Positions 32,858 through 60,604 of a stretch of DNA of 64,000 bases are shown here, piece after piece. Each line of letters starts with the position of its first letter. Positions within the stretch are counted from its first letter, which is position 1. Where the stretch lies: positions 380,767-444,766 of the forward strand of contig NW_018408079.1 in the NCBI RefSeq assembly GCF_002113885.1, given 5' to 3'. The stretch is from Mizuhopecten yessoensis (Eukaryota). Under the pieces are notes generated by a model. It saw only the letters and a list, made by a program, of their open reading frames with translations, was not told where the DNA came from and ran no database searches. The position numbers and the translations under genes were made by a program.

Positions 32858-35800
32858 TTACTTTGCCGAGAATGGCATGTCAGAATTCTCCGAACTCTTG
32901 GCCGAAATCCTTTCCAGACACATCGGTCGTTTGTTTTGTGACACGTCCCGTATCAGATTGATGAAAACGCTATATTCATCCGCGTAGTTGTACACGTTAG
33001 CGGACAGTCGGACAAACAGACTGTCAAGGACACAGAACAGCTGTACTTGAATATCGTGTTCATAGAAAAGGTCGTCCATCAATCGGTACGCCTCGGCCTG
33101 TAACAGAAAAAAACATAATCGCAATTAGTTGTCCATCAGGTTAGCAACCCAACATCATTACGGCAGAGACGTATAATATGGTATACGTCTCTGACTACGG
33201 TAAGTCGTCCACAACACAACACTACTGATATAAAACAGATCGTCCCACCTACAACACATTATCACTGATACAAAACAGATCGTCTCACCTACAACACATT
33301 ATCACTGACACAAAACAGATCGTCCCACCTACAACACATTATCACTGATACAAAACAGATCGTCCCTCCTACAACACATTATCACCGATACAAAACAGGT
33401 CGCCTCGCCTACAACACATTATTACTGATACAAAACAGATCGTCTTGCCTACATCATTTTATTACTGATAAAAAGTCAAAACAGATCGTCCAACCTACAA
33501 CACATTATCACCGATACAAAACAGGTCGCCTCGCCTACAACACATTATCACTGATACAAAACAGATCGTCCCCCCTACAACACATTATCACCGATACAAA
33601 ACAGGTCGCCTCGCCTACAACACATTATCACTGACACAAAACAGATCGTCCCACCTACAACACATTATCACTGACACAAAACAGATCGTGCCACCTACAA
33701 CACATTATCACTGACACAAAACAGATCGTCTTGCCTACATCATTTTATTACTGATAAAAAGTCAAAACAGATCGTCCAACCTACAACACATTATCACCGA
33801 TACAAAACAGGTCGCCTCGCCTACAACACATTATTACTGATACAAAACAGATCGTCTTGCCTACATCATTTTATTACTGATAGAAAGTCAAAACAGATCG
33901 TCCAACCTACAACACATTATCACTAATACAGAACAAATCGTCACACCTACAACACATTATCACTGATACAGAACAAATCGTCACACCTACAACACATTAT
34001 CACCGATAAAAACGGGTCGTCTTGCCTACAACACATTATCACTGATACAAAACAGATCGCCTCGCCTACAATACATTATCACTAATACAAAACAGATCGC
34101 CTCGCCTACAACACATTATCACCGATACAAAGCAGGTCGCCTCGCCTACAACACATTATTACTGATACAAAACAGATCATCTTGCCTACATCATTTTATT
34201 ACTGATAAAAAGTCAAAACAGATCGTCCCACCTACAACACATTATCACCGATACAAAACGGGTCATCTTGCCTACAACACATTATCACCGATACAAAACG
34301 GGTCGTCTTGCCTACAACACATTACCACTAATACAAAACAGGACGCCTCGCCTACAACACATTATCACTAATACAAACAGATCGCCCCGCCTACAACACA
34401 TTATTACTGATACAAAACAGGTCGTCTTGCCAACAACACATTATCACTAATACAAACCAGATCGCCTCGCCTACAACACATTACCACTAATACAAAACAG
34501 AGCGCCTCGCCTACAACACATTATCACTAATACAAAACAGTGCGCCTCGCCTACAACACATTACCACTAATACAAAACAGAGCGCCTCGCCTACAGCACA
34601 TTACCACTAATACAAACCAGATCGCCCCACCTACAACACATTATCACTAATACAAAACAGGTCGCTCCGCCTACAACACATTATCACTGATACAAAACAG
34701 ATCGCCTCGCCTACAACACATTATCACTGATACAAAACAGATCACCCCACCAACAACACAGTATCACTAATACAAAACAGGTCGCCTTGCTTACAACACA
34801 TTATCACTGATACAAAACAGGTTGCACTGCCTACAACACAAAATTACAAATGAGGTCGTCTGACCAAAATGCTTTACTGGGGTACTTTTCAAATAACACA
34901 GGTTTTTGAAGTTCCTACAGTAAATTGAATTACATGTGTATGCAACAAATTAAAGTGAGTTTTTTTTTGCGGTGGACGTGTACACGCTTTATCCTGATGC
35001 AGGCGCTATGATCCGATGATATTGCATTAAGCTTTATTCACCTGTGCATACAACTACAGTTCCCAAACATGTACGTACTGTCGTGATGTCATAGCCGTCC
35101 ATTTTCGGCAGCCTGACCATTCTCAAACATGGGGCTTCCATGTCCCGGGGGATGGGAAGTTTATCCGTACCCCATTCCGTCACCATCCGCTCAGTCAGGA
35201 TGTCCAGGAGAGAGGAATTGTGCCCAGTTATTGCAGTCTGGGGAAATATATAACAGAATCATGATATATATGGTCAAACACATATAGAATGTAGGCGAGA
35301 CTGTAATATATACATATTTCCAAACACATACGAAACTTGTACATACAAGTACATTGTGTGTATGAAACATTGGGAAAGGACTAGGGGCGTTAAAGGTCAT
35401 TTCGGCTTCACCGGGGATTATGAATTAAATGTTACATTCGTAATCTGGAATAATTGAAGTATGCAAAATGAAATTAATTCGACAACTGGTCTAGGAGATA
35501 TAGCATCACAAAGAGAGAATTAAACCTGCATTTGTGTGAATATCGTCTGTTATGCGCTATTTGGTTGGAAAATATGCCATTTTGAAGGAAATTAACTGAT
35601 CACTCTTCAATATTTGAAAGCCTCCGCATACAACAAAAAAACATAACGTTTGACATGCTTAAACATTTTTATACCAGTGTTCATTCGCTGAAAGAAATTT
35701 TTATTTGTCACATGCGGAGGCTTTCATTTCTGCATACTCACTGTCCGAAAACATCATATATTGGCTATTTCTGCATAGCAACGCAACTTCGTTGCTATTG

Positions 35801-38800
35801 TAGAGCATCAACAGAGTGTACGCATGTGCATTGGAAAACAATCTGCACCAAGAAAGATAGCCCCAATTAACCAAAATGATGTTTCTAACAGAAAATGGTA
35901 AATTAATTCAAGTTAAATTTTTTACTTTTTATGAGGCCAAAAATAACCCATAATGCCTTATGATGCATAGATTTATTTTCAAATATTTCTAAACACATAC
36001 GAAAATATATCATTTACATGATACATACATGTACGTACGAAAATTATGACAGTAAATTTGGATATAAACGGAACATATGATATATACAAGAATAGGACGC
36101 CATTTTTTCAATTTCACGCTGGTATAAACGCAAATCGGTTACATACATATTCCGACATAGATACCGGTAGCGGGCTTTATGGTAAATATGAATGTAATCG
36201 AATTACGTTCATACCAGCATAAACATTGAAAAAATGCCGTCCAATCATTATTCCCTTGTCTCTTCGATATTGAAGTGTTATGTCGTCATTGCAAATGAGA
36301 TTCCTGTAACAGCCTAGCGTCATCAAAATGTTTGCCTCTGACGGTTGTCTCATATTATTCAAGGCGGCTGATCAAATTGCGTGCATAGGCCTATGAACCC
36401 ATTGTCCTATATAGTAATGATTATTCCGTCTTTGCATGTTGCAGAGTTATCTTCTCTTGAGAGCAGGTATTGATTGTTACGTTATTTGTTTTTGAGAGTA
36501 ACGTCATCAATTTTTGGGAAAACGACGGAATTTTCTCACACAAACCAATGACGTAACAATCAATACCTGCTCTCAAGAGAAGATAACTGTGCAATACGCA
36601 AAGACGGAATAGAGGAACTTGCAGTGGAAGTGTAAATATATACATGTAAATTGTAGGTCAAATGACGTTACATTTTATGTTCAACAAATACACAGCAAAA
36701 TGATATTATAAAGAATAGCTGTTCTCTATCTCATTCAAATTTGACCAATCTTGAAATTCCAAAGAAAACGTCTGTCCATAAACAAGAATTAATAAGTTGA
36801 TTTTTTATATTAAACATACCATTCCTCCAAGGTCATCGTAAAATTGAAGAGCGTCGGGTACAGTTACGTAAGCACAATCGTCACGTGTTCCCTGCATGAA
36901 GAATTCCATCGTGAACTCTTTCAAGTAATACCATGAGGTGACTAGGGGGCGGACCCAGGCGTGATGTTCCTTCCTCACGTAGAGGAGAGCACATCCTCTC
37001 GGTGTATACGCCCACTTGTGTAGATTACCTGTATATTTACAATATCAACATTTAAACGATATCCAGGTACCACACTAACAATACCAATTGCAGGTGATTT
37101 TGAAGTTTATTGTTTGAGCAGTATTTTTTTTTTTACAGAATATGTCGTGTACACTACTTCTCATTCTACCACGTCGGCTATGTACCGCCACTTCATTTCA
37201 TTTCATTTTGTTAATGAATCATGTATGATTAAAAAATAGACGCGCGCGAGCATGTTCTATTGTTTAAAGGTTCCCTCGTATTGTAAACTGGCCTTGAACG
37301 TGTTTGCTTTGTCGTGTGAGGGTACACGTGTGCATGTACTAATCGTTTCCACAAATATCTCTAAAATGACACAAATGAACCACTGGCTACAATGGTCAAT
37401 CAATATAATGTCAGCTGCGTGCGGCATGTTGTTGAATTGGAAACGAGTCATTACGTGACAAATACTAGAACAGCATTTTTTAAATCATTTAACATCTAGA
37501 TAACAATACCTTGGTAGACATAAACACACATCACATCATGACGTGGTGGAATCTACAATCGACATATGTTTGTTCGTTACGTTGGAAATGCTCTCTTTGT
37601 ATTATTTGTCCTAACATTTTCTCAAACTCGAAATATATTATTTAGAAAATAAAAATTAATATATAAAATATTATTAATGCTGATTATTTCTTTAAAATAG
37701 CCCGTTATCAGAAATGCCGTAACCGCTCATGCTTTCACATGAAAAAAGACCAATAGTGAAATATGGTTATATGGACCTAAAACGAGCAGACATATATACA
37801 GAATAGAAAGAAAAGTATAATTTTAAACTATTAAACATTTGACGTTATTCTACAACGTCATGCACTTTATCTGTAGCTCTCGGAGCACTGTGAGCAAGAA
37901 CTAAGCTACTAACCGTTCCTACACACTGAATAACACACTCTTTTCCAAACCAACCTGTATAAAAGTCTGGATCCAGGTCCTTCATATCAATGGGCACCTG
38001 TCCTGGCGCATGCGCACCGTCTATCATAGACATGACATTATGCTCTCGACACACCTGAATGATTTTCTTGATGGGCATGACCACGGCAGTGGAACTTGTG
38101 ATGTGATCTGTGACGGAAATGACATATACGACTTATTCTATATATAGCAACAGTGACCTTGAATTTTGAATATTTAACCTGAAATAAGCCAAAAGCACAA
38201 CACTTTTGACAAGAAAGCCTTGTAGTAAGTTTGCATTTGATTAAGTCAATACAACTCAAGTAAAAGTGTTGACATTTAGTTTTTCTATTTATAGTAACAA
38301 CGACTTTGACCTTGGAACTTTTGATCTGAAAAGCAACATCCAGCATGCATCTTCGGCGAAAATGTAATGCACTATTTTCACTTCATTAACACAAGGGAAC
38401 TTGAGCTATTTGGTGAAAACGAATTCAGACATACAAGCTCGTTATATTATCACATCCACTATTTTGCGCGGGAGTTAAGGAACTTGACCTTGCCTATGAC
38501 CGCCAGGCGCACGTTAGGGTTAGAGGAGAGGAACTGTCGATACTGGTCCACTACGTCATCTTCGTTCTCTATTGGGTATTTAACGCCCATCATGTGGTAC
38601 TTCGCTCCTGAAAATAATGTCATATTCTTCCTTGTAATGTTATGTCAGATCAAAGGCAAAAATGCATTCTTGTGTTTACATTCAAATAGGTAAAATTTCA
38701 CAACAATTAAAATATATTAAGATAAATCATAAAATTTGGGAATGGTAAAGTATCGAGACATTTATTGATAATTCTATCTCTTCAAAACGATTACTTTTAA

Positions 38801-39966
38801 AAGATAAAAATTGATTTCGTTCAAAAAAAACCACAAAGATAAAATACCGTTAATTGATGTTTTCACGTGTTCGCACGTGAACTGAATCGCTGGATACGTG
38901 TTGTCTGTTGCTAGGATACCGTCACCCTCTTTAAGGTTCAGAGACTTCAAAATTGTATTTATCCCTTGGAACAGAAATACGTGAACAATTTTAAAGAATG
39001 GTCGCTGATGACTTTTACAGTAATAGTCTAATGAAATAGCCTATCCCACACACATTCCCTCATTACTATATATATAAGACTTTCCTACATCCTAATACAT
39101 GTACATATTGTACACACACTATATATATAAGACTTTCCTACATCCTAATACATGTACATAATGTACACACACTATATGGGTGACACTTTTCACTATTACA
39201 TTGCTTTAAATGAAGTCATAAATTGAAATAAATATCATACCCAACAACGAAATACACAATGTCAAAGGCAAATACATGTGTCTGGTTGTGTCCACAGTCA
39301 CATTGACGTCTGACCTGTAGTAAACGATAGCCACACATATTTTCAGTGACCTCTGACCTGAGGTAAATTAGTAGCTGGTATCAGTGACCTCTGACATGTA
39401 GTATATTAGAAGTAACATATTTCAGTGACCTCTGACCTTTAGTAACTAAGTATCCCACACAGATTTCACAGTGATTTCTCACCTGTCGTTGCGTTCTGTA
39501 CGAGTACAACATCCTCGGGGTTAGCATTGACAAACATGGCGATAGCGTCCCTTCCGGCCTTCCATTTGCCGAGGTTGTTCCGGCGGAACCAGTCATCTGG
39601 ATGATCGTCCATCTTATCGATGTAGCTAGGAACATGAATGTATAACAATAGCAGATTACAACATGCACTTAATTGATGGTGCAGAGGCTATTATTGAAAT
39701 CACGGAGTTAGAAGTCCGTGGTTAAAAACTTGAAACTATTACGTGTAACGTTCAAAACATCGGTATTTGTATATCTGATGAACACTGATATTATTATGAC
39801 GATGAAAATTTAAATATGAGATTTACCTTTTCTGGACGTCTTTTATTCGCCTCGGTACCATTCCGAACGAACCATGATTAAGAAACATGGACCCTTTCCT
39901 CATGCAGAATTCCTTTTCTCTCAACTCTAGTCCGAATGGAGGCATTGTCATCTCTTCGGAACCCAT
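32858..39966 (-). CDS. PLP-dependent aminotransferase class V C-S lyase (Egt2 hercynylcysteine sulfoxide lyase / L-cysteine desulfhydrase / isopenicillin N epimerase-like), 424 aa, 8 exons
   Basis: Exons 39966-39827, 39625-39483, 38964-38848, 38607-38494, 38107-37955, 37028-36820, 35237-35079, 33097-32858 total 1275 nt in one open frame. Motifs: FLNHGSFG, VQNATTGINT, LAVIDHITS, IDGAHAPGQ, GNLHKW (PLP lysine), QGTRD, RLSANVYN. Confidence 0.9.
33215..34840. repeat. 40-bp minisatellite (~40 copies) in the last intron of the lyase gene
   Basis: CCTACAACACATTATCACTGATACAAAACAGATCG unit, with a recurrent 45-bp variant. Confidence 0.95.
36422..36611. mobile_element. TA-flanked MITE with long TIRs (Tc1/mariner-like)
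   Basis: TATTCCGTCTTTGC..GCAGAGTTATCTTCTCTTG ... CAAGAGAAGATAACT..GCAAAGACGGAATA. Confidence 0.85.
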
Positions 39967-42177: not shown

Positions 42178-45100
42178 TTATATTGTGGGAATCCAGGTGT
42201 CGCTCTCGTGGTGTTCGACCTGTCGCTGGTACCATTGTAAGCCGCCATATTGGTTCTGGGCATCACTGGTTGGTGTGAGCCGTATTTCTCCGCCGGCTGT
42301 GAAGTCGGACGCCTTAAGCTCTATGTTTGGCGGGACGGCGTCAACTGCCAAAGAATCAACGTGTTTCAGCCAAGTGTTGAGTCTACTGTATGGCGATCTG
42401 GCCATGGCGCTGGTCTGTAGGGTGGACAGGTCGCTTGTGTAATTCATCGGGTACTGCTCTTCTGAAAATAAAAATAATTACATTCAATCGTTTTATATTG
42501 TTTTGAAAAGAAATTTAACAATCACACCTAAATTAACCTTTGAATCGTATAATGATTTTATAAGGACGAACGAAGAAACTCATAAACACATTCAATTAAC
42601 TTTGCGTTTAAAGTTTAAGTTTAAACATATTTATTGCCAAAATTAGACAAGGGATTAGGCACAAGTTATAACAATTTATCAACACCTTCTCCCAATATAC
42701 ATTTTAAATGACATTACAATAATGACAATAAATATATACAATTGTTGTTACAATTTGAACTCAAAATCTCTTGCTGGATTTAATAAAGTCTTGCACAGAT
42801 CTAAAGAAAAATTGAGTTAAGGTCCACGGAAAATTGTGAATTTGCGTTTGTAATTTGTATTTGACATTTAGTTTAAAGAACCTGATGTTCTGTTTCGACT
42901 GTTGCCTACCATTTATTGTGTTCCGTGCATCATCTCCGGAACCAGAGAGAGAACCGGAATTTGCTGTGTCGTTGTCGCTTAGTCCAGAATCCTGATTTCC
43001 GCCTCCGCTCCCCCTCCTTATATTTCTGATTCGTCTGCTCCTGTTTTTGTTTCGTTTGTTACGGAACCATGAATGTATCAACCTGGTGTCAATGCCTGTG
43101 AGCATGCTCAGTTTCTGCCGGATATGACGTGACGGTCGTTGGTTGGTCTGATATGCCTGCTCCAATACCTTCCGTTGATGAGGATCTAGGTTTAAAGAGA
43201 GCCGTTTACCCGTATTGCTGTCATAGCTTGATGTAACGTTTCCTTCATCAGAAGCTGTCAAAAATAATAGAGAAGACTCATAATGAATACTTTTGTAACA
43301 GGAGATGGAAAAATGCACGCCCAGACCGAGGTTCGAACCCGGGACCTTCCGAACTCTATTAAACAAAATATGTTAGATAATGATGTTAAACGAATATCGA
43401 TAGACAGAGAAATTAAAATATCTTAGGATAAAATATGTCATCGTGACTTACTGTAATGAAAGTTTTAATTTTTAGTTCAACTGGTTGAAACATACAATGC
43501 ACGCCCAAGTTGTCCTATCTCACTAATTGACCTCCTTCTGACACACACACAACAATACCTAGAGGTGCATTCCTCGTTTTTCGTGTTTTATTTCGCGGTG
43601 TCATTTCATATGAGGGAAACATAATACTATATCAAAGCACATAGTTTTTCCCATTTACCTTGCAGTTTTTGGAGATCTCGTTCACATAGAAGCTTGTCAT
43701 CTTCCCGGATGTAAAATTTATCGCCAGTTTGCAATGCAACGTGGCACAGTGCGCATGCAAAACATCTTTCGTGGTAAATATTGTTGCCTGCTATTCGGAC
43801 GGACTCCTCGGGAGCTATTACGCCTGAACATCCGGAACACGTCCCGCCAAACCGCCTGGTGATGAGGAAGTAAGACATTGGTAAGATACAATACTAACAC
43901 ATGGTAAAAGGTAAATAAATACACAAACTAAATACAACCTTTTACATAAAAGAGTTATACATGTGATACACAATTTCGTGTGGCTTTCTCAAAAAATAAC
44001 CGTACATTTGTTTTTTTCTATAACGTCCTCGCAACAGCCAGGGTCATATGAGGACGGGTGTCTATAGGGAGACACCAACGAAAAACCAAAGTAGGGAAGC
44101 GGAAAAATAAAAGATAAACCGTTCATTTTACAGTCAACTATATTATCTAAATTTATGAAGCTAATTCACAAACCGGTTAAGTGATCCAAACTTATTCATA
44201 AAAACAACGTAGCGCGCTGTGACACTAATCCATCGGAGCTACTGAAAAACGACACGCCACTGAAGGTATTGTGCTGTTGTTGATTTTTACACCTGTGAAA
44301 TGTGATCATGAAAGCTCACCTGTAGAAGTCAGTTTGACAGTATATGTCAGTTCCGTCGGAAAAACAAACTTCTGACACTTCCACGCCACATGACGTACAC
44401 CGAACGCATGCGCTGTGCATTAGTTTGTCCTGCACGCGCACCACGAGTCTGTCGTATATTCCACTTCCGCATCTACAACAGTTTGGGGGACTGGCTGGTG
44501 GAGAAATAGAAACAGGTTCATTACTCAATTACTGCTATAGAAAGTGTTGTGTTTTGAGTGAAACGTCTGTGAGTTTTTTACGATTGAGCAACAAGACCTG
44601 TCATATACTAGACCAAACGAAATGTCATACAGAAAGACAATACAGAATTTGCACATTAAAATTAAAAAGGTCATACAAAAATCATACAAGTCATACAGAA
44701 AGTTCATACATAAGTCATTATTTTTTGTATTTGATCATATAAAGGTCGACTAAGTTGATGCCACCGAAAAGAAAAAAAGAGTACATGAACGTAGGAGAGA
44801 AACGGAAATATCCCAAGTATTGTACATCAACAGAAGACAGTCCTGATTCAGTAAGGGGGGCACCACATTAGTCGCCTCTTATGACGTGCGATAAAATACA
44901 GCAAAAAAATCATACAAAGGTCCTACATGATTTCATGTAGAAATGTCATACATACATCAACCTTAAGCATATTTAAAACCTTACACATTTTAAAACTGAT
45001 TTATAGTATATGTAATAAAAGAAACTATCAATTCTTTATGCATTTATTCAAATATTTAAAGTATAATGTATAAGTGAACATCTGTTGAAACTAAAATCCA

Positions 45101-45437
45101 AACATATATGGTAACAGAGACGTATATACTACTACGGCTTTATATGTCTGATGGTAATGGGCGATACATATAAATTTAATATGAAATTCTTGCAGAATTC
45201 ATAGGATAGAAAGGAATAATAGCTATAACAATACATAACAAGAAGGGTTGGCTTTCATCACTCACCTCCATTCCAGCTGCTGCCCAACGTGGAAAATTGT
45301 TCCACGGATTGGGGGACGGACATATGCTCGTTGGACACGGGGACAGGTGTCAGCTGATGCTCCCCGGGGGTGGGGACCGATGTGGACGACAGGCGTTCCA
45401 ATATAACAGGTGAGGTAACGCTACCCATCGCGTTCAT
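42178..45437 (-). CDS. Divergent LIM-homeobox transcription factor (Lhx3/4-like), 390 aa, 5 exons
   Basis: Exons 45437-45266, 44494-44320 (LIM1), 43855-43659 (LIM2), 43254-42910 (homeodomain), 42461-42178, all in phase. All eight Zn ligands are present in both LIM domains. Homeodomain: KRLSLNLDPHQRKVLEQAYQTNQRPSRHIRQKLSMLTGIDTRLIHSWFRNKRNK. Exon 1 is supported only by ORF, donor and phase. Confidence 0.88.
42612..42815. repeat. Dispersed ~200-bp repeat, second direct copy at ~47367-47570
   Basis: Near-identical TAAGTTTAAACATATTTATTGCCAAAATTAGACAAGGGATTAGGCACAAG...GCACAGATCTAAA. Confidence 0.85.
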
Positions 45438-48400: not shown

Positions 48401-49948
48401 TTATTTACGTTTCTAAACCATACGGTGTAATTACAAACTTAAGTTGAATCCAACTGACAGTTCAATTTAAAGGTAAGATAACTATGAAGATAAAAACATG
48501 GCTAATAGGATACTTTATACAGTAAAATGGAGATTTCAACGAAATATGAGCTAGTACAAAAGTACTCGGCGGTATTTGCCGCTTTCCTAATCTTCAAAAA
48601 ATATTTAAATAGATACAGCCTTTTATCATATTTTTGGTAATTATTAATAAACAGTGTCACCAATGAATACTCCAGATTGTTTTCAATTTACGATTATTCA
48701 ACTTCCTCCATATCCTCCAATGGAGGTACACCCTCATCACGTGACATGCATATCTAAAACGCGGTCGCATCCAGAGAAGAAACTATTTCGGAAACGAAGA
48801 ATTTTCTTCATGACATCAAAACTACGAAAACAAGGCAAAGTTTGGGGCCACTTTCCCATAACCAGAACTAAACGGATCAACCGCTTCAACAAGTTCACAT
48901 GAAAGAAAACGACTGGAAAATATCTGGACCGAGGCTAAATTCGACACGTGCATATCGAGGGTCCAGTTGTGCCTGGCGAAGATTTACTTCGGTTACATGA
49001 AACGAACAAAACTAGTTTCCAGAGCTATTGTCCGATAAAACATAAAAAAAATCTTAAAGGATGATTATCGCTAGTTTTCGGTTTTTTATCAGGTTCAGTA
49101 CGCTTTGCCGATTGCGCTATATACACCTATAAATTATAGCTGTATTGAGCTATATTTTCTCAGATTTCAAATTTCATTAAATTAAGGTAGCTCCACACTT
49201 TCGCAATTAACCAGCAAAATTCGTTGAAACTTTCATTTAATGGTTATGCAACTATGTAGAGTTAATTTTATGAAAATCTAAACATTCCGATAGTTTGGGG
49301 ACTTTTTTGGAAAAAATACCAAAATGTTCGGAACAATAACAACAATAAAAAAAATGAAAAGAAGCATTTCTAATTAACCCTGCAAATATTTTATTTATCG
49401 CAAAATATGTAACACATGTTACACAAAGTGTATTTTTATTGAATTTGTACGGATAAAAGTGATTATCTACAGGCTAAAAGCAAACAGGACACAAAGATCT
49501 ATACATATAGAGTGGGAAATTGAACAATACATACACAATGGCTTTATAATCAATTTATTTTACATTTTACAATCACTTTGATCCGGGTAAGAGTTATCGT
49601 CCTTGAAAAAAAAAACTTTTTGCAGAGGGATGACATTTACACAATGACAGTTGTCTCTGTTAACATATAACAAAAATGATGGAAATAAATCAACAATATG
49701 ATATCAAAATTATCAATTTATTGTTTACCAAATTACCCTCAGTCATGTACACTTTGGACATCATTCCACAGTCCGCTAACTCACGGTATATGTGACATGG
49801 TATGCCGTTCTCATGTGCACTCACACATGCATTTCATAGGTATCTTGATATTTTACAAAACATTATTTTCACAGAGTAAGTAGACTACATTTGTAAACAC
49901 GATTTAATCGACAGAGCGAAACTCCCTCCAGGGGAGGATCCAGGATTT

Positions 49949-50913
49949 NNNNNNNNNNNNNNNNNNNNNNNNNNNNNNNNNNNNNNNNNNNNNNNNNNNN
50001 NNNNNNNNNNNNNNNNNNNNNNNNNNNNNNNNNNNNNNNNNNNNNNNNNNNNNNNNNNNNNNNNNNNNNNNNNNNNNNNNNNNNNNNNNNNNNNNNNNNN
50101 NNNNNNNNNNNNNNNNNNNNNNNNNNNNNNNNNNNNNNNNNNNNNNNNNNNNNNNNNNNNNNNNNNNNNNNNNNNNNNNNNNNNNNNNNNNNNNNNNNNN
50201 NNNNNNNNNNNNNNNNNNNNNNNNNNNNNNNNNNNNNNNNNNNNNNNNNNNNNNNNNNNNNNNNNNNNNNNNNNNNNNNNNNNNNNNNNNNNNNNNNNNN
50301 NNNNNNNNNNNNNNNNNNNNNNNNNNNNNNNNNNNNNNNNNNNNNNNNNNNNNNNNNNNNNNNNNNNNNNNNNNNNNNNNNNNNNNNNNNNNNNNNNNNN
50401 NNNNNNNNNNNNNNNNNNNNNNNNNNNNNNNNNNNNNNNNNNNNNNNNNNNNNNNNNNNNNNNNNNNNNNNNNNNNNNNNNNNNNNNNNNNNNNNNNNNN
50501 NNNNNNNNNNNNNNNNNNNNNNNNNNNNNNNNNNNNNNNNNNNNNNNNNNNNNNNNNNNNNNNNNNNNNNNNNNNNNNNNNNNNNNNNNNNNNNNNNNNN
50601 NNNNNNNNNNNNNNNNNNNNNNNNNNNNNNNNNNNNNNNNNNNNNNNNNNNNNNNNNNNNNNNNNNNNNNNNNNNNNNNNNNNNNNNNNNNNNNNNNNNN
50701 NNNNNNNNNNNNNNNNNNNNNNNNNNNNNNNNNNNNNNNNNNNNNNNNNNNNNNNNNNNNNNNNNNNNNNNNNNNNNNNNNNNNNNNNNNNNNNNNNNNN
50801 NNNNNNNNNNNNNNNNNNNNNNNNNNNNNNNNNNNNNNNNNNNNNNNNNNNNNNNNNNNNNNNNNNNNNNNNNNNNNNNNNNNNNNNNNNNNNNNNNNNN
50901 NNNNNNNNNNNNN
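49949..50913. other. Assembly gap
   Basis: Run of N. Confidence 1.
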
Positions 50914-51479
50914 GTACAGCATATCATCTCATTCTGGTACGTACAACTTATTACTACGTACACAATAGTATGCTGTGTGAAGATACTTTCTTGTACGTAC
51001 ACGACGGTAAGCTATAAGTACCACAATGAGATATTATGTTGTACATACATGTACAAGCACGGAATTAAGTCCGTGATACAAGATAGTTAAACAGTTCCAA
51101 CAATATATACAATACCAAAATAATTGAATGGATATGTTTAGTCGATTATACATAATATTGTCAGCCGAAAGATATGATTAATATCGCCCGGGCGGTTAGG
51201 AAGGTTACAATAAAAAGTATTAATTTTCAGATCATCTATAACGAGCGGTCAATAATATAAGTATGCAACTTATGCTAGTATATTTTCGCCGAGCGTTGCA
51301 AGTTGCAACTTGGGGTTTTGCGGAGGTGGTAAAATAAAAAAAAAACACTTTAGGGTCAAGATACAAAGTAGACGAGCGTAGCGATGCGAACAAATATTTT
51401 TTTAATAAAGAAAATATAGTAAAAATATCAGATAACGTGTGTTGACACATCATCGGCACGCACGTGTACTATTGTTTAC

Positions 51480-58300: not shown

Positions 58301-60604
58301 CAGACCCGTGAGTACAGCTAACGTGTATTTCTGTTAAAATAAAGGACAACATATCCATGGTTAGTTGTGACGTGTATCTCTGTTATAATAAAGGACAAGA
58401 GATTCGAGTGATCCATGGTTAGTTGTAAGTGTATTTCTGTTACAATAAAGGACGAGAGATCTGTCGTTAGTTGTATCATATGCAATCCTCAAAGTTCCTT
58501 GTTGACCTCACTTACGTTCTCAGCACTCCTTAAATGTAAAAACAAAATGAATGCACGCGGTAAGCTATTTGATTGGTTTCAGGTAAAAAAAAACCACACT
58601 GACCTGTCGCTGGGCTGATACATGTCCTTTAATTGAATATTACAACAGAGCGGCCTCTAACTTCAAAGTCGACGAATGCTACCATTACGCTACCGTGCGA
58701 TTCTTTGGTGGACATCAAAGGATCAAGCTAGTCTGATTGTATTATCCACACGGTAGCCGTACAAAGCATTTGATTTATTTTATCATGACATATTACAGGG
58801 GATCAGAGAACGCCAGACAGGTACCATGTAATTCATTGTTCTGATTTCATTTGTTGCATATGATACTTTATAAAATGTCGAAAATATCAAGTAAGTAATT
58901 TTATTTCGGTAATTTTGTGTTTTAGGAATGCAACCAAGCGACTGAGTCTTCAGAATGACAAAGATACAACGGTACTTCACTCAAACCCCAAAACCAAATT
59001 TTCTCTGTTGGGGATTCTAAAATGTACTCTATGTTCACATGAAAATGCTGTTAAAAGTCCACAACAGGAAACAAAGAAAAAACTTATCGACTGTAGCCTA
59101 CTGAATAATCCGTTATTCACCTCGTTGTGTATCGCCATCTTGTTTTTAGCACTTGCTTTCAGTTCGGTACTTGTTTTCATTCCATCCCTGGCCGATTTCA
59201 TCGGTCTAACACGCCTACAGGGGGCGTTCATTCTGTCCATAGCTGGTATTTTTGACACGATTGGTCGCCTAGTGTCCGGAGTCGTCCTAGATGTAGAACG
59301 AGTGAAGAAATTCCGGATGTTGGTGTATAATAGTGCAGTGTTCCTGTTGTCCACCCTGACATTCGTTCTCGCTTACGTTACCACGTTTGTACAATTAGCG
59401 ATTATTGCGGCTCTGTATGGACTTCTTATTGGCACCTACACTTCTCAGAAGACAGTGATACTTGCGGATATTTTAGGATCCGGTGCATTGTCCAGCTCGT
59501 TCGGAATTCTGATATGTTTCCAGGGAGTCGGAACTCTTCTTGGTCCACCAATTACAGGTAAGTTACATGAAGGAGAGGAGGAGGATGGCGCCAGCGTAGT
59601 CACGTGATTAAACTTAAACAAAAATTCATAGATATCAACACACCTTTTTGTAGCACGCTATCAGCACGTGCACGACACCGCAGTGTTACCTCTGTTTGTA
59701 GGATGTCATAATTTGTCCTTAATTGTTTCGTCGGTTATTAGTAACTTAAATGAGTTCTGTATTACCTCGTTCCAAGAAGACTTCTTATGGTTCATACAAA
59801 CCATTTTCAAGAACATATATTTACGTTTATAGTTTAAAAAAACATTTTGGTATTAATAGATGTTTAAACGAAGAAATATCTTCCCGTTCATATGTCCTAT
59901 CACGAAGACACCATGACGTTGATAGATCCTTTTCTACCAAGATATCTTGGCATTCATAGATGCTCGTCATGAATAAATCCTGTCGTTCATATATGTCAGT
60001 TACAAGAACACGTCTTTACAGTCATAGCTTTATAAAAGACGTTAAGTGTTGATGGTTGTTTTTTGCGAACATATCTTGGTGCTCAATGATTCAAGTTTCA
60101 AGATGAAATCATGATGTTTATGCATGCCTGTTTTATTGGCGTACTGTTTTCACGAAGATTTCTTGGCGTTTCATAGAAGCTTTTCACGAAAACCTCTTGG
60201 TGTTCATGGATAGTAGATACCAGTTTGATAAAGGCATTTTAGTGATAATACATACTTTTCGATATCTTGGTGTTCAAAACGAAAGTTTTAAAAGCCATCA
60301 TAGGGTTTATTGAAGGTTTCACGAAGAAATCTTCAAAATCCAGTTTCAAGAAGACAGTTTGGAGTCTTTTAACGAAAGTACCTCGCCATGATTCATAACT
60401 TAATGAAAAAACATTTTCAAGTCATCTTTTTATTCATTTGTAGGCTTTCTGAAGGACAATTTGGACTCCTTTGCAGTAGGATTCTATGTAGCTGCTGCCA
60501 TAAACTTTCTCGGTGCTTTGATTTTGCTTACTGGCAATATTTATCAATACACCAAAACTAGCAAACGTACGAAAACAGACAATTTGGAAATGGATGACGC
60601 TTAG
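55398..60604 (+). CDS. Monocarboxylate transporter (SLC16/MFS), 526 aa, 6 coding exons
   Basis: Exons 55398-55650, 56604-56720, 56987-57130, 58034-58307, 58926-59557, 60444-60604 in phase. MCT signature PDRGWGW, YFKKKRGLAVGLATAGGGVG, GRLVSG, LLGPPITGFLKD. The acceptor at 55381 implies an upstream 5'UTR exon. Confidence 0.92.
56020..56170. repeat. ~34-bp minisatellite
   Basis: ATAGTTTCACGACCTTGGATCTATACCAGTTATA repeats. Confidence 0.8.
57470..57955. repeat. 31-bp minisatellite in an MCT intron
   Basis: TATCAA(A/T)GACAT..AGTG..TTCATGTG at a 31-bp period (57775, 57806, 57837, 57868, 57899). Confidence 0.85.

What the first reader, a model, noticed from the sequence alone, without database searches (positions are those of the whole stretch)
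42178..45437. Divergent LIM-homeobox paralog with a rewired recognition helix (R50, S47, N54, no R5)
Seen: helix 3 reads IHSWFRNKRNK instead of the LIM-HD [11 protein letters not shown], and the N-terminal arm reads KRLSL instead of KRPRT. W48, F49, N51, R53 and all LIM zinc ligands are kept. Known: residues 5, 47, 50 and 54 set homeodomain DNA specificity, and canonical LIM-HD proteins are Q50. RPSRHIR..LS..TGID.R and TGDKFY..ED.KL.C point to an Lhx3/4 origin. Inference: a fast-evolving, lineage-specific LIM-HD that binds a new motif, or one that competes for Ldb/Islet cofactors like an LMO protein.
Basis: partly seen in the sequence, partly recalled or inferred. Interest (0 to 1): 0.72.

Follow-up and report, generated by a model that had tools for sequence, protein, structure and literature searches.

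The report
Scallop LIM-homeobox paralog with rewired helix
This is a real, intact, conserved scallop gene for a LIM-homeodomain transcription factor: an extra, highly diverged relative of Lhx3/4 that belongs to a so far undescribed mollusc-restricted gene family, and in scallops its DNA-reading helix has changed at the positions that set target specificity.

Summary
On the minus strand at 42178-45437 lies a clean five-exon gene in the Yesso scallop genome. It encodes LIM1, LIM2, a homeodomain and a conserved C-terminal tail, 390 aa in all. It is identical to the RefSeq model named 'LIM/homeobox protein Lhx3-like'. Helix 3 reads IHSWFRNKRNK (S47, R50, N54) and the N-terminal arm reads KRLSL (S5).

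A separate canonical Lhx3/4 sits on contig C942, so this gene is an extra paralog. Intact orthologs with the same five exons exist in Ylistrum balloti and Pecten maximus. An intronless mRNA contig from a public sequencing run encodes a fourth ortholog. All four keep S47 and R50, and dN/dS is 0.10-0.14, so the gene is constrained now.

More distant kin share a family-specific C-terminal motif (W..D..PPN[IV][ED]L). They are found in the ark clam Tegillarca (canonical R5/V47/Q50/A54), in Haliotis (two tandem copies, Q50) and in Littorina (H50, no N51). The family is therefore at least gastropod plus bivalve, and the R50 rewiring is scallop-specific.

Sequence similarity favours an Lhx3/4 origin. 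The tree only places the family within the Lhx1/5+Lhx3/4 supergroup. A new DNA motif and Ldb binding remain inferences; the Ldb docking test gave weak support. I found no paper describing this family.

The parts
45266..45437 (-). Exon 1: start codon and a poorly conserved N-terminal region (57 codons plus 1 base).
   Evidence: ORF and GT donor read. Substring of P0168. No Pfam family. dN/dS 0.23-0.64 among scallops.
44320..44494 (-). Exon 2: LIM domain 1. All zinc ligands are kept; the usually conserved Trp before the His ligand is Met.
   Evidence: Pfam LIM 8.2e-10. Translation. Nearest own-genome paralog is C942 Lhx3/4, 42% identity, 9.5e-12. dN/dS 0.03-0.14.
43659..43855 (-). Exon 3: LIM domain 2.
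   Evidence: Pfam LIM 2.9e-15. Translation. Nearest paralog is C942 Lhx3/4, 52% identity, 8.4e-16. dN/dS 0.06-0.10.
42910..43254 (-). Exon 4: linker, the whole homeodomain, a basic tail and a Ser/Gly/Asp-rich stretch.
   Evidence: Pfam Homeodomain 3.2e-12. Translation. 73-78% identical in other scallops.
43031..43210 (-). Homeodomain, positions 1-60. It has S5, S47, R50 (codon 43061-43063) and N54, and keeps R3, L16, Y20, W48, F49, N51 and R53.
   Evidence: Direct reading. AlphaFold2 gives three helices at pLDDT 82-94. dN/dS 0.07-0.17. Residues 42-53 (TRLIHSWFRNKR) are identical in all four scallops.
42178..42461 (-). Exon 5: conserved C-terminal region and stop codon. No Pfam family, and single copy in the genome.
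   Evidence: This is the most constrained exon, dN/dS 0.04-0.09.
42277..42378 (-). Family-specific C-terminal motif: NTWLKHVDSLAVDAVPPNIELKASDFTAGGEIRL.
   Evidence: Aligned with Tegillarca, Littorina and Haliotis relatives. A profile of the motif finds only family members; it does not find the canonical Lhx3/4 locus or other LIM-HD proteins. It is low-confidence, probably disordered, in the AlphaFold2 model.

Best explanation
The gene encodes a functional, nuclear LIM-homeodomain transcription factor. It is the scallop member of a mollusc-restricted paralog family that most likely arose by duplication of Lhx3/4 and then diverged strongly.

The family is marked by its own conserved C-terminal motif. 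On the lineage leading to scallops (Pectinidae) the DNA-contacting residues changed: R5 to S/A/T, V47 to S, Q50 to R, A54 to N/S. The new state was then frozen by purifying selection.

The most likely mechanism has three parts:
1. The two LIM domains still recruit the Ldb/Chip cofactor.
2. The homeodomain still binds DNA through N51, R53, W48, F49 and R3.
3. The preference for the bases 3' of the TAAT core has shifted, so the protein regulates a target set different from that of canonical Lhx3/4.

Shown here: the gene structure, a separate canonical Lhx3/4, intact orthologs in three further scallop-type sequences, purifying selection, one spliced mRNA contig from an unidentified source, and the wider family with its motif.

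Inferred: DNA binding with new specificity, Ldb binding, and the Lhx3/4 origin rather than an Lhx1/5 origin.
For: Gene model:
- Five exons with consensus splice sites, identical to the 390-aa protein P0168.

A separate canonical Lhx3/4:
- LIM1, LIM2, homeodomain and C-terminal exons lie in order on contig C942.

Orthologs:
- Intact orthologs with the same five exons exist in Ylistrum balloti and Pecten maximus, with the aminotransferase neighbour conserved in both and the transporter neighbour also in Ylistrum.
- An intronless 1684-nt contig from run SRR19746226 carries the whole ORF, which means spliced mRNA.

Selection:
- dN/dS is 0.10-0.14 overall at dS 0.8-1.2. The homeodomain is at 0.07-0.17 and the C-terminal exon at 0.04-0.09.
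- S47 and R50 are fixed in all four scallops.

Wider family:
- The Tegillarca relative keeps R5, V47, Q50 and A54 and shares the C-terminal motif. The rewiring therefore came after the split between ark clams and scallops.
- Haliotis and Littorina relatives share the motif.

Lhx3/4 affinity:
- Best solved-structure matches are Lhx3/Lhx4 LIM domains at 116 bits, against LMO4 at 72 and Isl1 at 67. The best homeodomain match is Lhx4.
- The best own-genome paralog is C942 for all three domains.
- At columns that distinguish Lhx3/4 from Lhx1/5, Tegillarca scores 9:0 and Littorina 8:0 for the Lhx3/4 state.
- In the tree, the family plus Lhx3/4 plus Lhx1/5 separate from Isl, Lmx, Lhx2/9 and Lhx6/8 with support 97/87.

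Fold:
- AlphaFold2 folds both LIM domains and a three-helix homeodomain with confidence.

Ldb docking:
- The scallop protein's LIM1-LIM2 with the scallop Ldb LID scored ipSAE 0.47, against 0.01 for the best of three controls. The tool's verdict is weak support. That mark was reached by 51 of 78 solved complexes and 2 of 108 mismatched pairs, but scores of 0.60 or under were reached by only 5 of those 78. The runs agree in at least 88% of contacts and the partner pLDDT is at least 61.

Published experiments:
- A Q50R change in Gsx2 leaves high-affinity TAATTA binding (11 nM against 3 nM) but abolishes binding to TAATGG. That paper cites a selection study (Chu et al. 2012) in which R50 homeodomains preferred TAAN(A/T)C (PMC11876842).
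- Positions 47, 50 and 54 jointly set 3' base recognition (PMC3460184).
Against: - There are no binding data for this protein. With R5 lost as well as 47, 50 and 54 changed, affinity could be low.
- In the Littorina relative even N51 is lost (WFHLHRK). This hints that in this family the homeodomain can be dispensable while the LIM domains and C-terminal motif persist.
- The family clade itself has weak support (76/36). AU tests do not separate an Lhx3/4 origin from an Lhx1/5 origin.
- The Ldb result is only weak support. It may also reflect the model's memory of solved LIM-LID complexes.
- I could not obtain expression evidence for M. yessoensis itself.
- The source species of the mRNA contig is not identified; calling it a scallop rests on sequence similarity.
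Confidence: 0.6

Rival explanations
1. LMO-like competitor. The protein works mainly through its LIM domains, and perhaps the C-terminal motif, by titrating Ldb or Islet-type partners away from canonical LIM-HD complexes. The rewired homeodomain would give little or no sequence-specific DNA binding.
For: - The LIM domains and the C-terminal exon are the most constrained parts, dN/dS 0.03-0.14 and 0.04-0.09.
- Across the family the homeodomain is the least stable part. Littorina has lost N51, and scallops have lost R5, V47 and Q50.
- Weak support for Ldb-LID docking: 0.47 against 0.01 for the best control.
Against: - Within scallops the homeodomain is strongly constrained, dN/dS 0.07-0.17, and residues 42-53 are invariant. 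A dispensable domain should decay.
- N51, R53, W48, F49, R3 and a long basic tail are all kept.
- A Q50R homeodomain still binds TAATTA at 11 nM (PMC11876842).
Confidence: 0.22
2. It is the scallop's only, merely aberrant, Lhx3/4 ortholog.
For: RefSeq names it 'Lhx3-like'. Lhx3/4 is its nearest relative.
Against: - A canonical Lhx3/4 gene lies on contig C942 of the same genome, with LIM1, LIM2, a near-invariant homeodomain and the post-homeodomain RW..YF box.
- The gene in the window lacks that box and carries a different C-terminal motif.
Confidence: 0.01
3. It is a decaying or unexpressed duplicate: a pseudogene in the making, or an annotation artefact.
For: - Very long stem branch of 1.89 substitutions per site.
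- Only 870 library proteins reach E 0.001 with the homeodomain exon, and one cluster below 1e-30.
- No M. yessoensis transcript could be retrieved.
Against: - The frames are open and the splice sites intact in three scallop genomes.
- dN/dS is 0.10-0.14 at near-saturated dS.
- There is a full-length spliced mRNA contig encoding an ortholog.
- The aminotransferase neighbour is conserved in both other scallop genomes.
Confidence: 0.03

Closest known systems
Canonical Lhx3/4 (Lim3) LIM-homeodomain family
   Same: - The same LIM1-LIM2-homeodomain architecture.
- The best sequence match for all three domains.
- The homeodomain lies in a single exon, as in the scallop's own Lhx3/4.
- Y20, the 'TG(L/I)D' turn and the S35 state are shared.
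   Different: - Only 32% identity over the homeodomain exon.
- R5, V47, Q50, R52 and A54 are replaced.
- There is no RW..YF box after the homeodomain.
- It is a separate locus, and membership of the Lhx3/4 clade is not shown by the tree.
LMO (LIM-only) proteins
   Same: Two tandem LIM domains of the nuclear, Ldb-binding type. LMO4 and LMO2 are the next-best structural matches.
   Different: This gene keeps a constrained homeodomain and a basic tail. LMO proteins have none.
Asymmetrically diverged homeobox duplicates with changed residue 50/54: bicoid (from Hox3/zen, Q50K and M54R), eutherian ETCHbox genes (from CRX), spiralian SPILE/TALE expansions
   Same: A conserved parent gene is retained alongside a fast-diverged daughter whose specificity positions 47, 50 and 54 changed and were then fixed. 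Titles and abstracts are listed (PMC6177261, PMC8208926). Novel lophotrochozoan homeobox clades are described in PMC5322547.
   Different: - This case is in the LIM class. In that study the only lineage-specific LIM clade came from neodermatan flatworms, and the oyster has just the eight canonical genes.
- R50, not K50, is used here.
- The N-terminal arm also lost R5.
Engineered or pathogenic Q50R homeodomains (Gsx2 Q252R; HOXD13 Q50R)
   Same: The same Q-to-R change at position 50. In Gsx2 it keeps TAATTA binding but loses TAATGG binding (PMC11876842).
   Different: Those are single deleterious mutations in otherwise canonical homeodomains. Here R50 is the conserved wild-type state and sits together with S47, N/S54 and no R5.

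Membership tests
LIM-homeodomain (LIM-HD) class | Two tandem N-terminal LIM zinc-finger domains, each with all eight metal ligands | tested here: met
   Pfam LIM 8.2e-10 and 2.9e-15. Ligands read and aligned.
LIM-homeodomain (LIM-HD) class | A homeodomain C-terminal to the LIM domains, with a three-helix fold | tested here: met
   Pfam Homeodomain 3.2e-12. The AlphaFold2 model has helices at residues 206-218, 224-234 and 238-263 at pLDDT 82-94.
LIM-homeodomain (LIM-HD) class | LIM domains bind the LIM-interaction domain of Ldb/Chip | tested here: inconclusive
   Docking with the scallop Ldb LID (L044:9381-9500) scored 0.47, against 0.01 for the best of three controls. The verdict is 'weak support'. 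The mark was reached by 51 of 78 solved complexes and 2 of 108 mismatched pairs, but rarely at 0.60 or under. Runs agree in at least 88% of contacts and the partner pLDDT is at least 61.
Lhx3/4 family | Falls inside the Lhx3/4 clade in a LIM-HD phylogeny | tested here: inconclusive
   It groups with Lhx3/4 plus Lhx1/5 against the other four families (97/87). Holding it with Lhx3/4 (AU p 0.31) or with Lhx1/5 (p 0.26) is not rejected in either case.
Lhx3/4 family | Lhx3/4 is the nearest family by sequence | tested here: met
   own genome; solved structures; protein library; diagnostic columns.
Lhx3/4 family | Near-invariant homeodomain (KRPRTTI..., [15 protein letters not shown]) followed by the Lhx3/4-specific box (RW..YF) | tested here: not met
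   The window reads KRLSLNL...LIHSWFRNKRNKNRSRRIRNIRRG with no such box. The C942 gene has both features.
Lhx3/4 family | It is the genome's one-to-one ortholog of Lhx3/4 | tested here: not met
   The canonical Lhx3/4 lies on contig C942.
LMO (LIM-only) | No DNA-binding domain | tested here: not met
   A constrained homeodomain is present.
Molluscan divergent Lhx3/4-like family (proposed here) | LIM-LIM-homeodomain plus the C-terminal motif W..D..PPN[IV][ED]L | tested here: met
   The motif is shared by four scallops, Tegillarca, Littorina and, more loosely, Haliotis. It is absent from the canonical Lhx3/4 locus and from the other LIM-HD proteins. In the tree the eight rows form one group, with support 76/36, and do so in 96% of bootstrap trees relative to Lhx3/4 and Lhx1/5.

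The most novel reading that the evidence does not exclude
Molluscs possess a previously unrecognised seventh LIM-homeodomain family. It derives from Lhx3/4 and is defined by a conserved C-terminal W..D..PPN[IV][ED]L motif. Its DNA-recognition surface has been rebuilt independently in different lineages: R50/S47/no R5 in scallops, H50 with loss of N51 in Littorina, and still canonical in ark clams and abalone. The scallop protein would then read a DNA motif that no other animal LIM-HD reads. The C-terminal motif could be a new partner-binding or LIM-binding peptide.
Probability: 0.4. Interest if true: 0.65.

Novelty: new variant of a known kind. Interest (0 to 1): 0.48.

Why it matters
LIM-homeodomain proteins form six ancient and very conservative families that specify neuron and organ identities across animals. 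Lineage-specific additions are rare.

This case offers a retained canonical parent next to a daughter whose specificity residues were replaced and then frozen for the whole history of scallops. Close relatives still carry the ancestral residues. Together these make a natural series for testing how a homeodomain changes its target set, comparable to the bicoid case.

It also adds a candidate new homeobox family, with its own C-terminal motif, to the molluscan developmental toolkit. None of this is shown experimentally. In databases the gene is simply labelled 'Lhx3-like'.

Tried and rejected
- **Word-index search with the homeodomain exon alone** found nothing. The length window of 63-200 aa excludes full-length kin, so this blank is not evidence.
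- **Single-domain trees** of LIM1 and LIM2 were too short to resolve anything beyond the scallop clade. The LIM2 tree gave the family 83/87.
- **AU tests** could not decide between an Lhx3/4 and an Lhx1/5 sister relationship.
- **Exact look-ups** of the M. yessoensis protein and of the Littorina protein returned nothing. I have no transcript evidence for this species and no Littorina locus.
- **Synteny with Tegillarca** within 10 kb was not found.
- **The neighbour of the Haliotis gene** might have been the canonical Lhx3/4, which would have shown a tandem origin. It is instead a second copy of the divergent family.
- **The C-terminal region** did not fold or dock confidently in the full-length AlphaFold2 model (pLDDT 33-50). 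The idea that it binds the protein's own LIM domains was not pursued, because the single complex job went to Ldb.
- **tRNA and Rfam scans** of the gene region were empty.
- **Literature searches** found no description of this family. The library covers only open-access papers, and the scallop genome paper itself was not examined.
- **Joined spliced model.** Exons were searched one by one by reference. Full-length searches used the database record P0168, which equals the exon translations. For the tree only, aligned domain blocks from separate exons of the scallop paralogs were placed side by side inside a script.
- No contig that I take for human was met.
Full report
**What is there**

Genome size (987,588,634 bases) and scaffold count (82,659) reported for the window's assembly match the table entry for Mizuhopecten yessoensis GCF_002113885.1 in PMC7566022. 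The window is contig C4752:380767-444766.

On the minus strand between 45437 (ATG) and 42178 (stop) I read five exons with consensus GT/AG borders and consistent phases:

| Exon | Coordinates | Content |
|---|---|---|
| 1 | 45437-45266 | N-terminal region |
| 2 | 44494-44320 | LIM1 |
| 3 | 43855-43659 | LIM2 |
| 4 | 43254-42910 | homeodomain |
| 5 | 42461-42178 | C-terminal region and stop |

Searched exon by exon by reference, Pfam gives LIM (8.2e-10), LIM (2.9e-15) and Homeodomain (3.2e-12). Exons 1 and 5 match nothing. Each exon translation is a substring of the 390-aa database protein P0168, which its source names 'LIM/homeobox protein Lhx3-like [Mizuhopecten yessoensis]'. The gene model is therefore right and already annotated, though not characterised.

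**The observation**

The homeodomain reads GKRLSLNLDPHQRKVLEQAYQTNQRPSRHIRQKLSMLTGIDTRLIHSWFRNKRNKNRS. Numbered from W48/F49, this gives S5, S47, R50, N54 and K52. R3, L16, Y20, W48, F49, N51 and R53 are kept. Both LIM domains keep all eight zinc ligands.

**A canonical Lhx3/4 exists elsewhere**

Searching the whole genome with each exon finds the best paralog on contig C942 for all three domains:

| Domain | Identity to C942 | E-value |
|---|---|---|
| LIM1 | 42% | 9.5e-12 |
| LIM2 | 52% | 8.4e-16 |
| Homeodomain exon | 32% | 1.5e-7 |

The C942 gene encodes [72 protein letters not shown]. This is a textbook Lhx3/4 homeodomain with the family's post-homeodomain box.

By sequence signature (my own knowledge of the families), the remaining LIM-HD exons in the genome are:
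- Lhx1/5 on C5420, with the homeodomain split by an intron at position 46/47
- Islet on C4226
- Lhx6/8 on C2202
- two Lmx genes on C5343
- Lhx2/9 on C76704
- an unassigned LIM2 exon on C5521

These are listed. This matches the eight canonical genes listed for the oyster (PMC5322547), plus the gene in the window as an extra. Its exons 4 and 5 are single-copy.

**Relatives in other scallops**

A full HMMER scan of 1.84 billion representative proteins with exon 4 found only 870 hits at E 0.001 or better, and one below 1e-30. That one is P0001, 'Lhx3-like' of the scallop Ylistrum balloti.

A search with P0001 added the Pecten maximus protein P0169 and P0170. P0170 is encoded by an intronless 1684-nt contig of sequencing run SRR19746226. 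That contig carries the whole 386-codon ORF with the exon blocks abutting, so it is a spliced mRNA. Its species is not identified; I call it a scallop only from similarity.

The two genomic loci have the same five exons. The PLP-dependent aminotransferase neighbour is conserved in both, and the MFS transporter neighbour also in Ylistrum. All four proteins read TRLIHSWFRNKR[N/S]K. Position 5 is S, A or T.

**Selection**

I computed Nei-Gojobori dN/dS exon by exon on in-frame codons and summed the counts.

| Region | dN/dS |
|---|---|
| Whole gene (all six species pairs, dS 0.78-1.23) | 0.10-0.14 |
| LIM1 | 0.03-0.14 |
| LIM2 | 0.06-0.10 |
| Homeodomain (60 codons) | 0.07-0.17 |
| C-terminal exon | 0.04-0.09 |
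| N-terminal exon | 0.23-0.64 |

dS is close to saturation, so the ratios are rough. Even so, the gene is clearly under purifying selection in living scallops. The 'fast evolution' belongs to the stem: 1.89 substitutions per site on the branch leading to scallops, against about 0 for the scallop's canonical Lhx3/4.

**A wider family**

Single-homeodomain hits of the big scan included P0092 of the ark clam Tegillarca granosa and two unnamed fragments, P0064 and P0097.

*Tegillarca.* Its protein has GKRLRTNISVQQ...RVVRVWFQNKRAKAKK, that is R5, V47, Q50 and A54. Downstream of its 'partial' gene model there is a further exon encoding ...QWIQFLDTLSPDCIPPNIELTADDIKNGEV...NWLPAL. This matches the scallop tail ...TWLKHVDSLAVDAVPPNIELKASDFTAGGEI...TWIPTI.

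*Gastropods.* A profile search added 'Lhx3/4-like' proteins of Haliotis rufescens and H. rubra (homeodomain ...VIQVWFQNKRAK; tail FWDAHFPPSFDLTEDEI). It also added one from Littorina saxatilis (homeodomain ...RVRVWFHLHRKEK, so H50 and no N51; tail WRPDFVPPNVDLSPCDIKNGEV).

*The motif.* A profile of the motif scores all of these at 1e-9 to 1e-23. It finds nothing in the scallop Lhx3/4 locus or in any other retrieved LIM-HD protein.

*Haliotis.* H. rufescens carries two tail-to-tail copies of the divergent gene.

The family is therefore at least as old as the split between gastropods and bivalves. The rewired recognition surface of the window's gene arose after scallops separated from ark clams. 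I could not check whether these gastropods also keep a canonical Lhx3/4, nor whether oysters truly lack the family. Only the 2015 oyster list says so.

**Origin**

Several lines favour Lhx3/4:
- Among solved structures, the LIM1-LIM2 pair matches Lhx3 and Lhx4 best (116 bits), well above LMO4 (72), Isl1 (67) and LMO2 (47). The best homeodomain match is Lhx4.
- After the family itself, the best single-homeodomain library hits are sequences their sources call 'LIM homeobox protein 3/4'.
- At the 17 columns that are fixed but different between Lhx3/4 and Lhx1/5, the Lhx3/4:Lhx1/5 scores are Tegillarca 9:0, Littorina 8:0, Haliotis 7:3 and scallops 6-7:3-5.

The maximum-likelihood tree of aligned LIM1+LIM2+homeodomain blocks (181 columns, LG+C20) is less decisive:
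- It puts the family, Lhx3/4 and Lhx1/5 together against Isl, Lmx, Lhx2/9 and Lhx6/8 (97/87).
- It recovers the eight family members as one group, weakly (76/36; 96% of bootstrap trees relative to the Lhx3/4 and Lhx1/5 rows).
- AU tests reject neither family+Lhx3/4 (p 0.31) nor family+Lhx1/5 (p 0.26).

An Lhx3/4 origin is the best-supported reading but is not proven.

**How it probably works**

AlphaFold2, run with a 15-sequence alignment, folds both LIM domains (pLDDT 76-95) and a three-helix homeodomain (82-94). The N-terminus, linker and C-terminal region are below 50, consistent with disorder or short linear motifs.

The scallop Ldb gene has a perfectly conserved LIM-interaction domain, DVMVVGEPTLMGGEFGDEDERLITRLENSQF, at L044:9381-9500. 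Docking it to LIM1-LIM2 of this protein scored 0.47, against 0.01 for the best of three controls. The tool grades this 'weak support':
- The mark was reached by 51 of 78 solved complexes and 2 of 108 mismatched pairs.
- Scores of 0.60 or under were reached by only 5 of those 78.
- The runs agree in at least 88% of contacts, and the partner pLDDT is at least 61.
- A pass may come from the model's memory of solved LIM-LID complexes.

For the homeodomain, published work shows that positions 47, 50 and 54 jointly set recognition of the bases 3' of the core (PMC3460184). It also shows that Q50R in Gsx2 keeps TAATTA binding (11 nM against 3 nM) but loses TAATGG. That paper cites a bacterial selection study (Chu et al. 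2012) in which R50 homeodomains preferred TAAN(A/T)C (PMC11876842).

Three observations bear on this gene: N51, R53, W48, F49 and R3 are retained; there is a long basic tail; and selection on the homeodomain is tight. Together they favour a DNA-binding factor with shifted specificity over an LMO-like decoy. The decoy reading is not excluded. Across the family the homeodomain is the most changeable part (Littorina even lacks N51), whereas the LIM domains and the C-terminal motif persist.

**Known or new**

The gene is annotated as 'Lhx3-like' in three scallops. My literature searches found no description of this paralog family, its C-terminal motif or an R50 LIM-HD. The oyster survey reports a lineage-specific LIM clade only in flatworms.

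I therefore rate it a new variant of a known kind. It is interesting to homeobox evolution specialists and directly testable, but not surprising in principle, since asymmetric divergence of homeobox duplicates is well known.

**Limits**

Exons were searched separately by reference. Full-length work used database records.
- Domain blocks were set side by side only inside the tree script.
- Sampling of other molluscs was limited to what the word-index and representative libraries returned.
- dS is near saturation.
- All functional statements are inferences.

Noticed in passing
L047:10001-14052 and L047:20165-24052 (Haliotis rufescens JALGQA010000008.1): Two tail-to-tail copies of the divergent Lhx3/4-like gene lie about 6 kb apart. 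They are 67-75% identical in the LIM and homeodomain exons, and both have Q50.
   Followed up: partly
P0175 (Littorina saxatilis 'Lhx3-like isoform X2'): The homeodomain reads RVRVWFHLHRKEK. It has H50 and has lost the almost universal N51, while the LIM domains and the C-terminal VPPNVDL motif are kept. This suggests a homeodomain that no longer binds DNA in the usual way.
   Followed up: no
window 44397-44411 (LIM1, minus strand): The Trp that precedes the His zinc ligand in the other LIM-HD sequences aligned here ('WHxxC') is Met in all four scallop orthologs (LMHSAC). It is Trp in the Tegillarca, Haliotis and Littorina relatives.
   Followed up: no
G000:C80185:1077-1250 and G000:C76704:126296-126469: The Lhx2/9 LIM1 exon occurs twice with nearly identical flanks. 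One copy is on a 2.4-kb scaffold, probably an unmerged haplotype or an assembly duplicate.
   Followed up: no
window 32858-39966 and 58915-59607: The flanking genes are a PLP-dependent aminotransferase class V / C-S lyase-like gene and an MFS transporter. The aminotransferase neighbour is found next to the ortholog in Ylistrum balloti and Pecten maximus, and the transporter in Ylistrum. Neither is found within 10 kb in Tegillarca.
   Followed up: partly
window 43300-43360 (intron 3): A stretch with a tRNA-like box B (GGTTCGAACCCGGGACC) looks like a SINE remnant. ARAGORN and Rfam call nothing there.
   Followed up: partly
window about 49900-50950: A run of N (assembly gap or masked stretch). 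I left it as it is.
   Followed up: no
proteins P0011, P0033, P0088, P0105 (one search hits): Among the best 150 library hits, 26 of 376 'WFxN' motifs carry R at position 50. The four read in full are proteins with several homeodomains that end in NWFRN(M/L)RQ. R50 is therefore rare but not unique in nature.
   Followed up: partly
L039 (JGI metagenome 3300005037) and L040 (SRR8643648): P0097 is a genomic homeodomain exon of unknown host (RSRSNISYQQ...TVQIWFQNKRSKDRRRR...DSGLVSD). It resembles the scallop exon 4, including the DSGL.SD stretch, but has Q50. It is probably another bivalve member of the family.
   Followed up: partly
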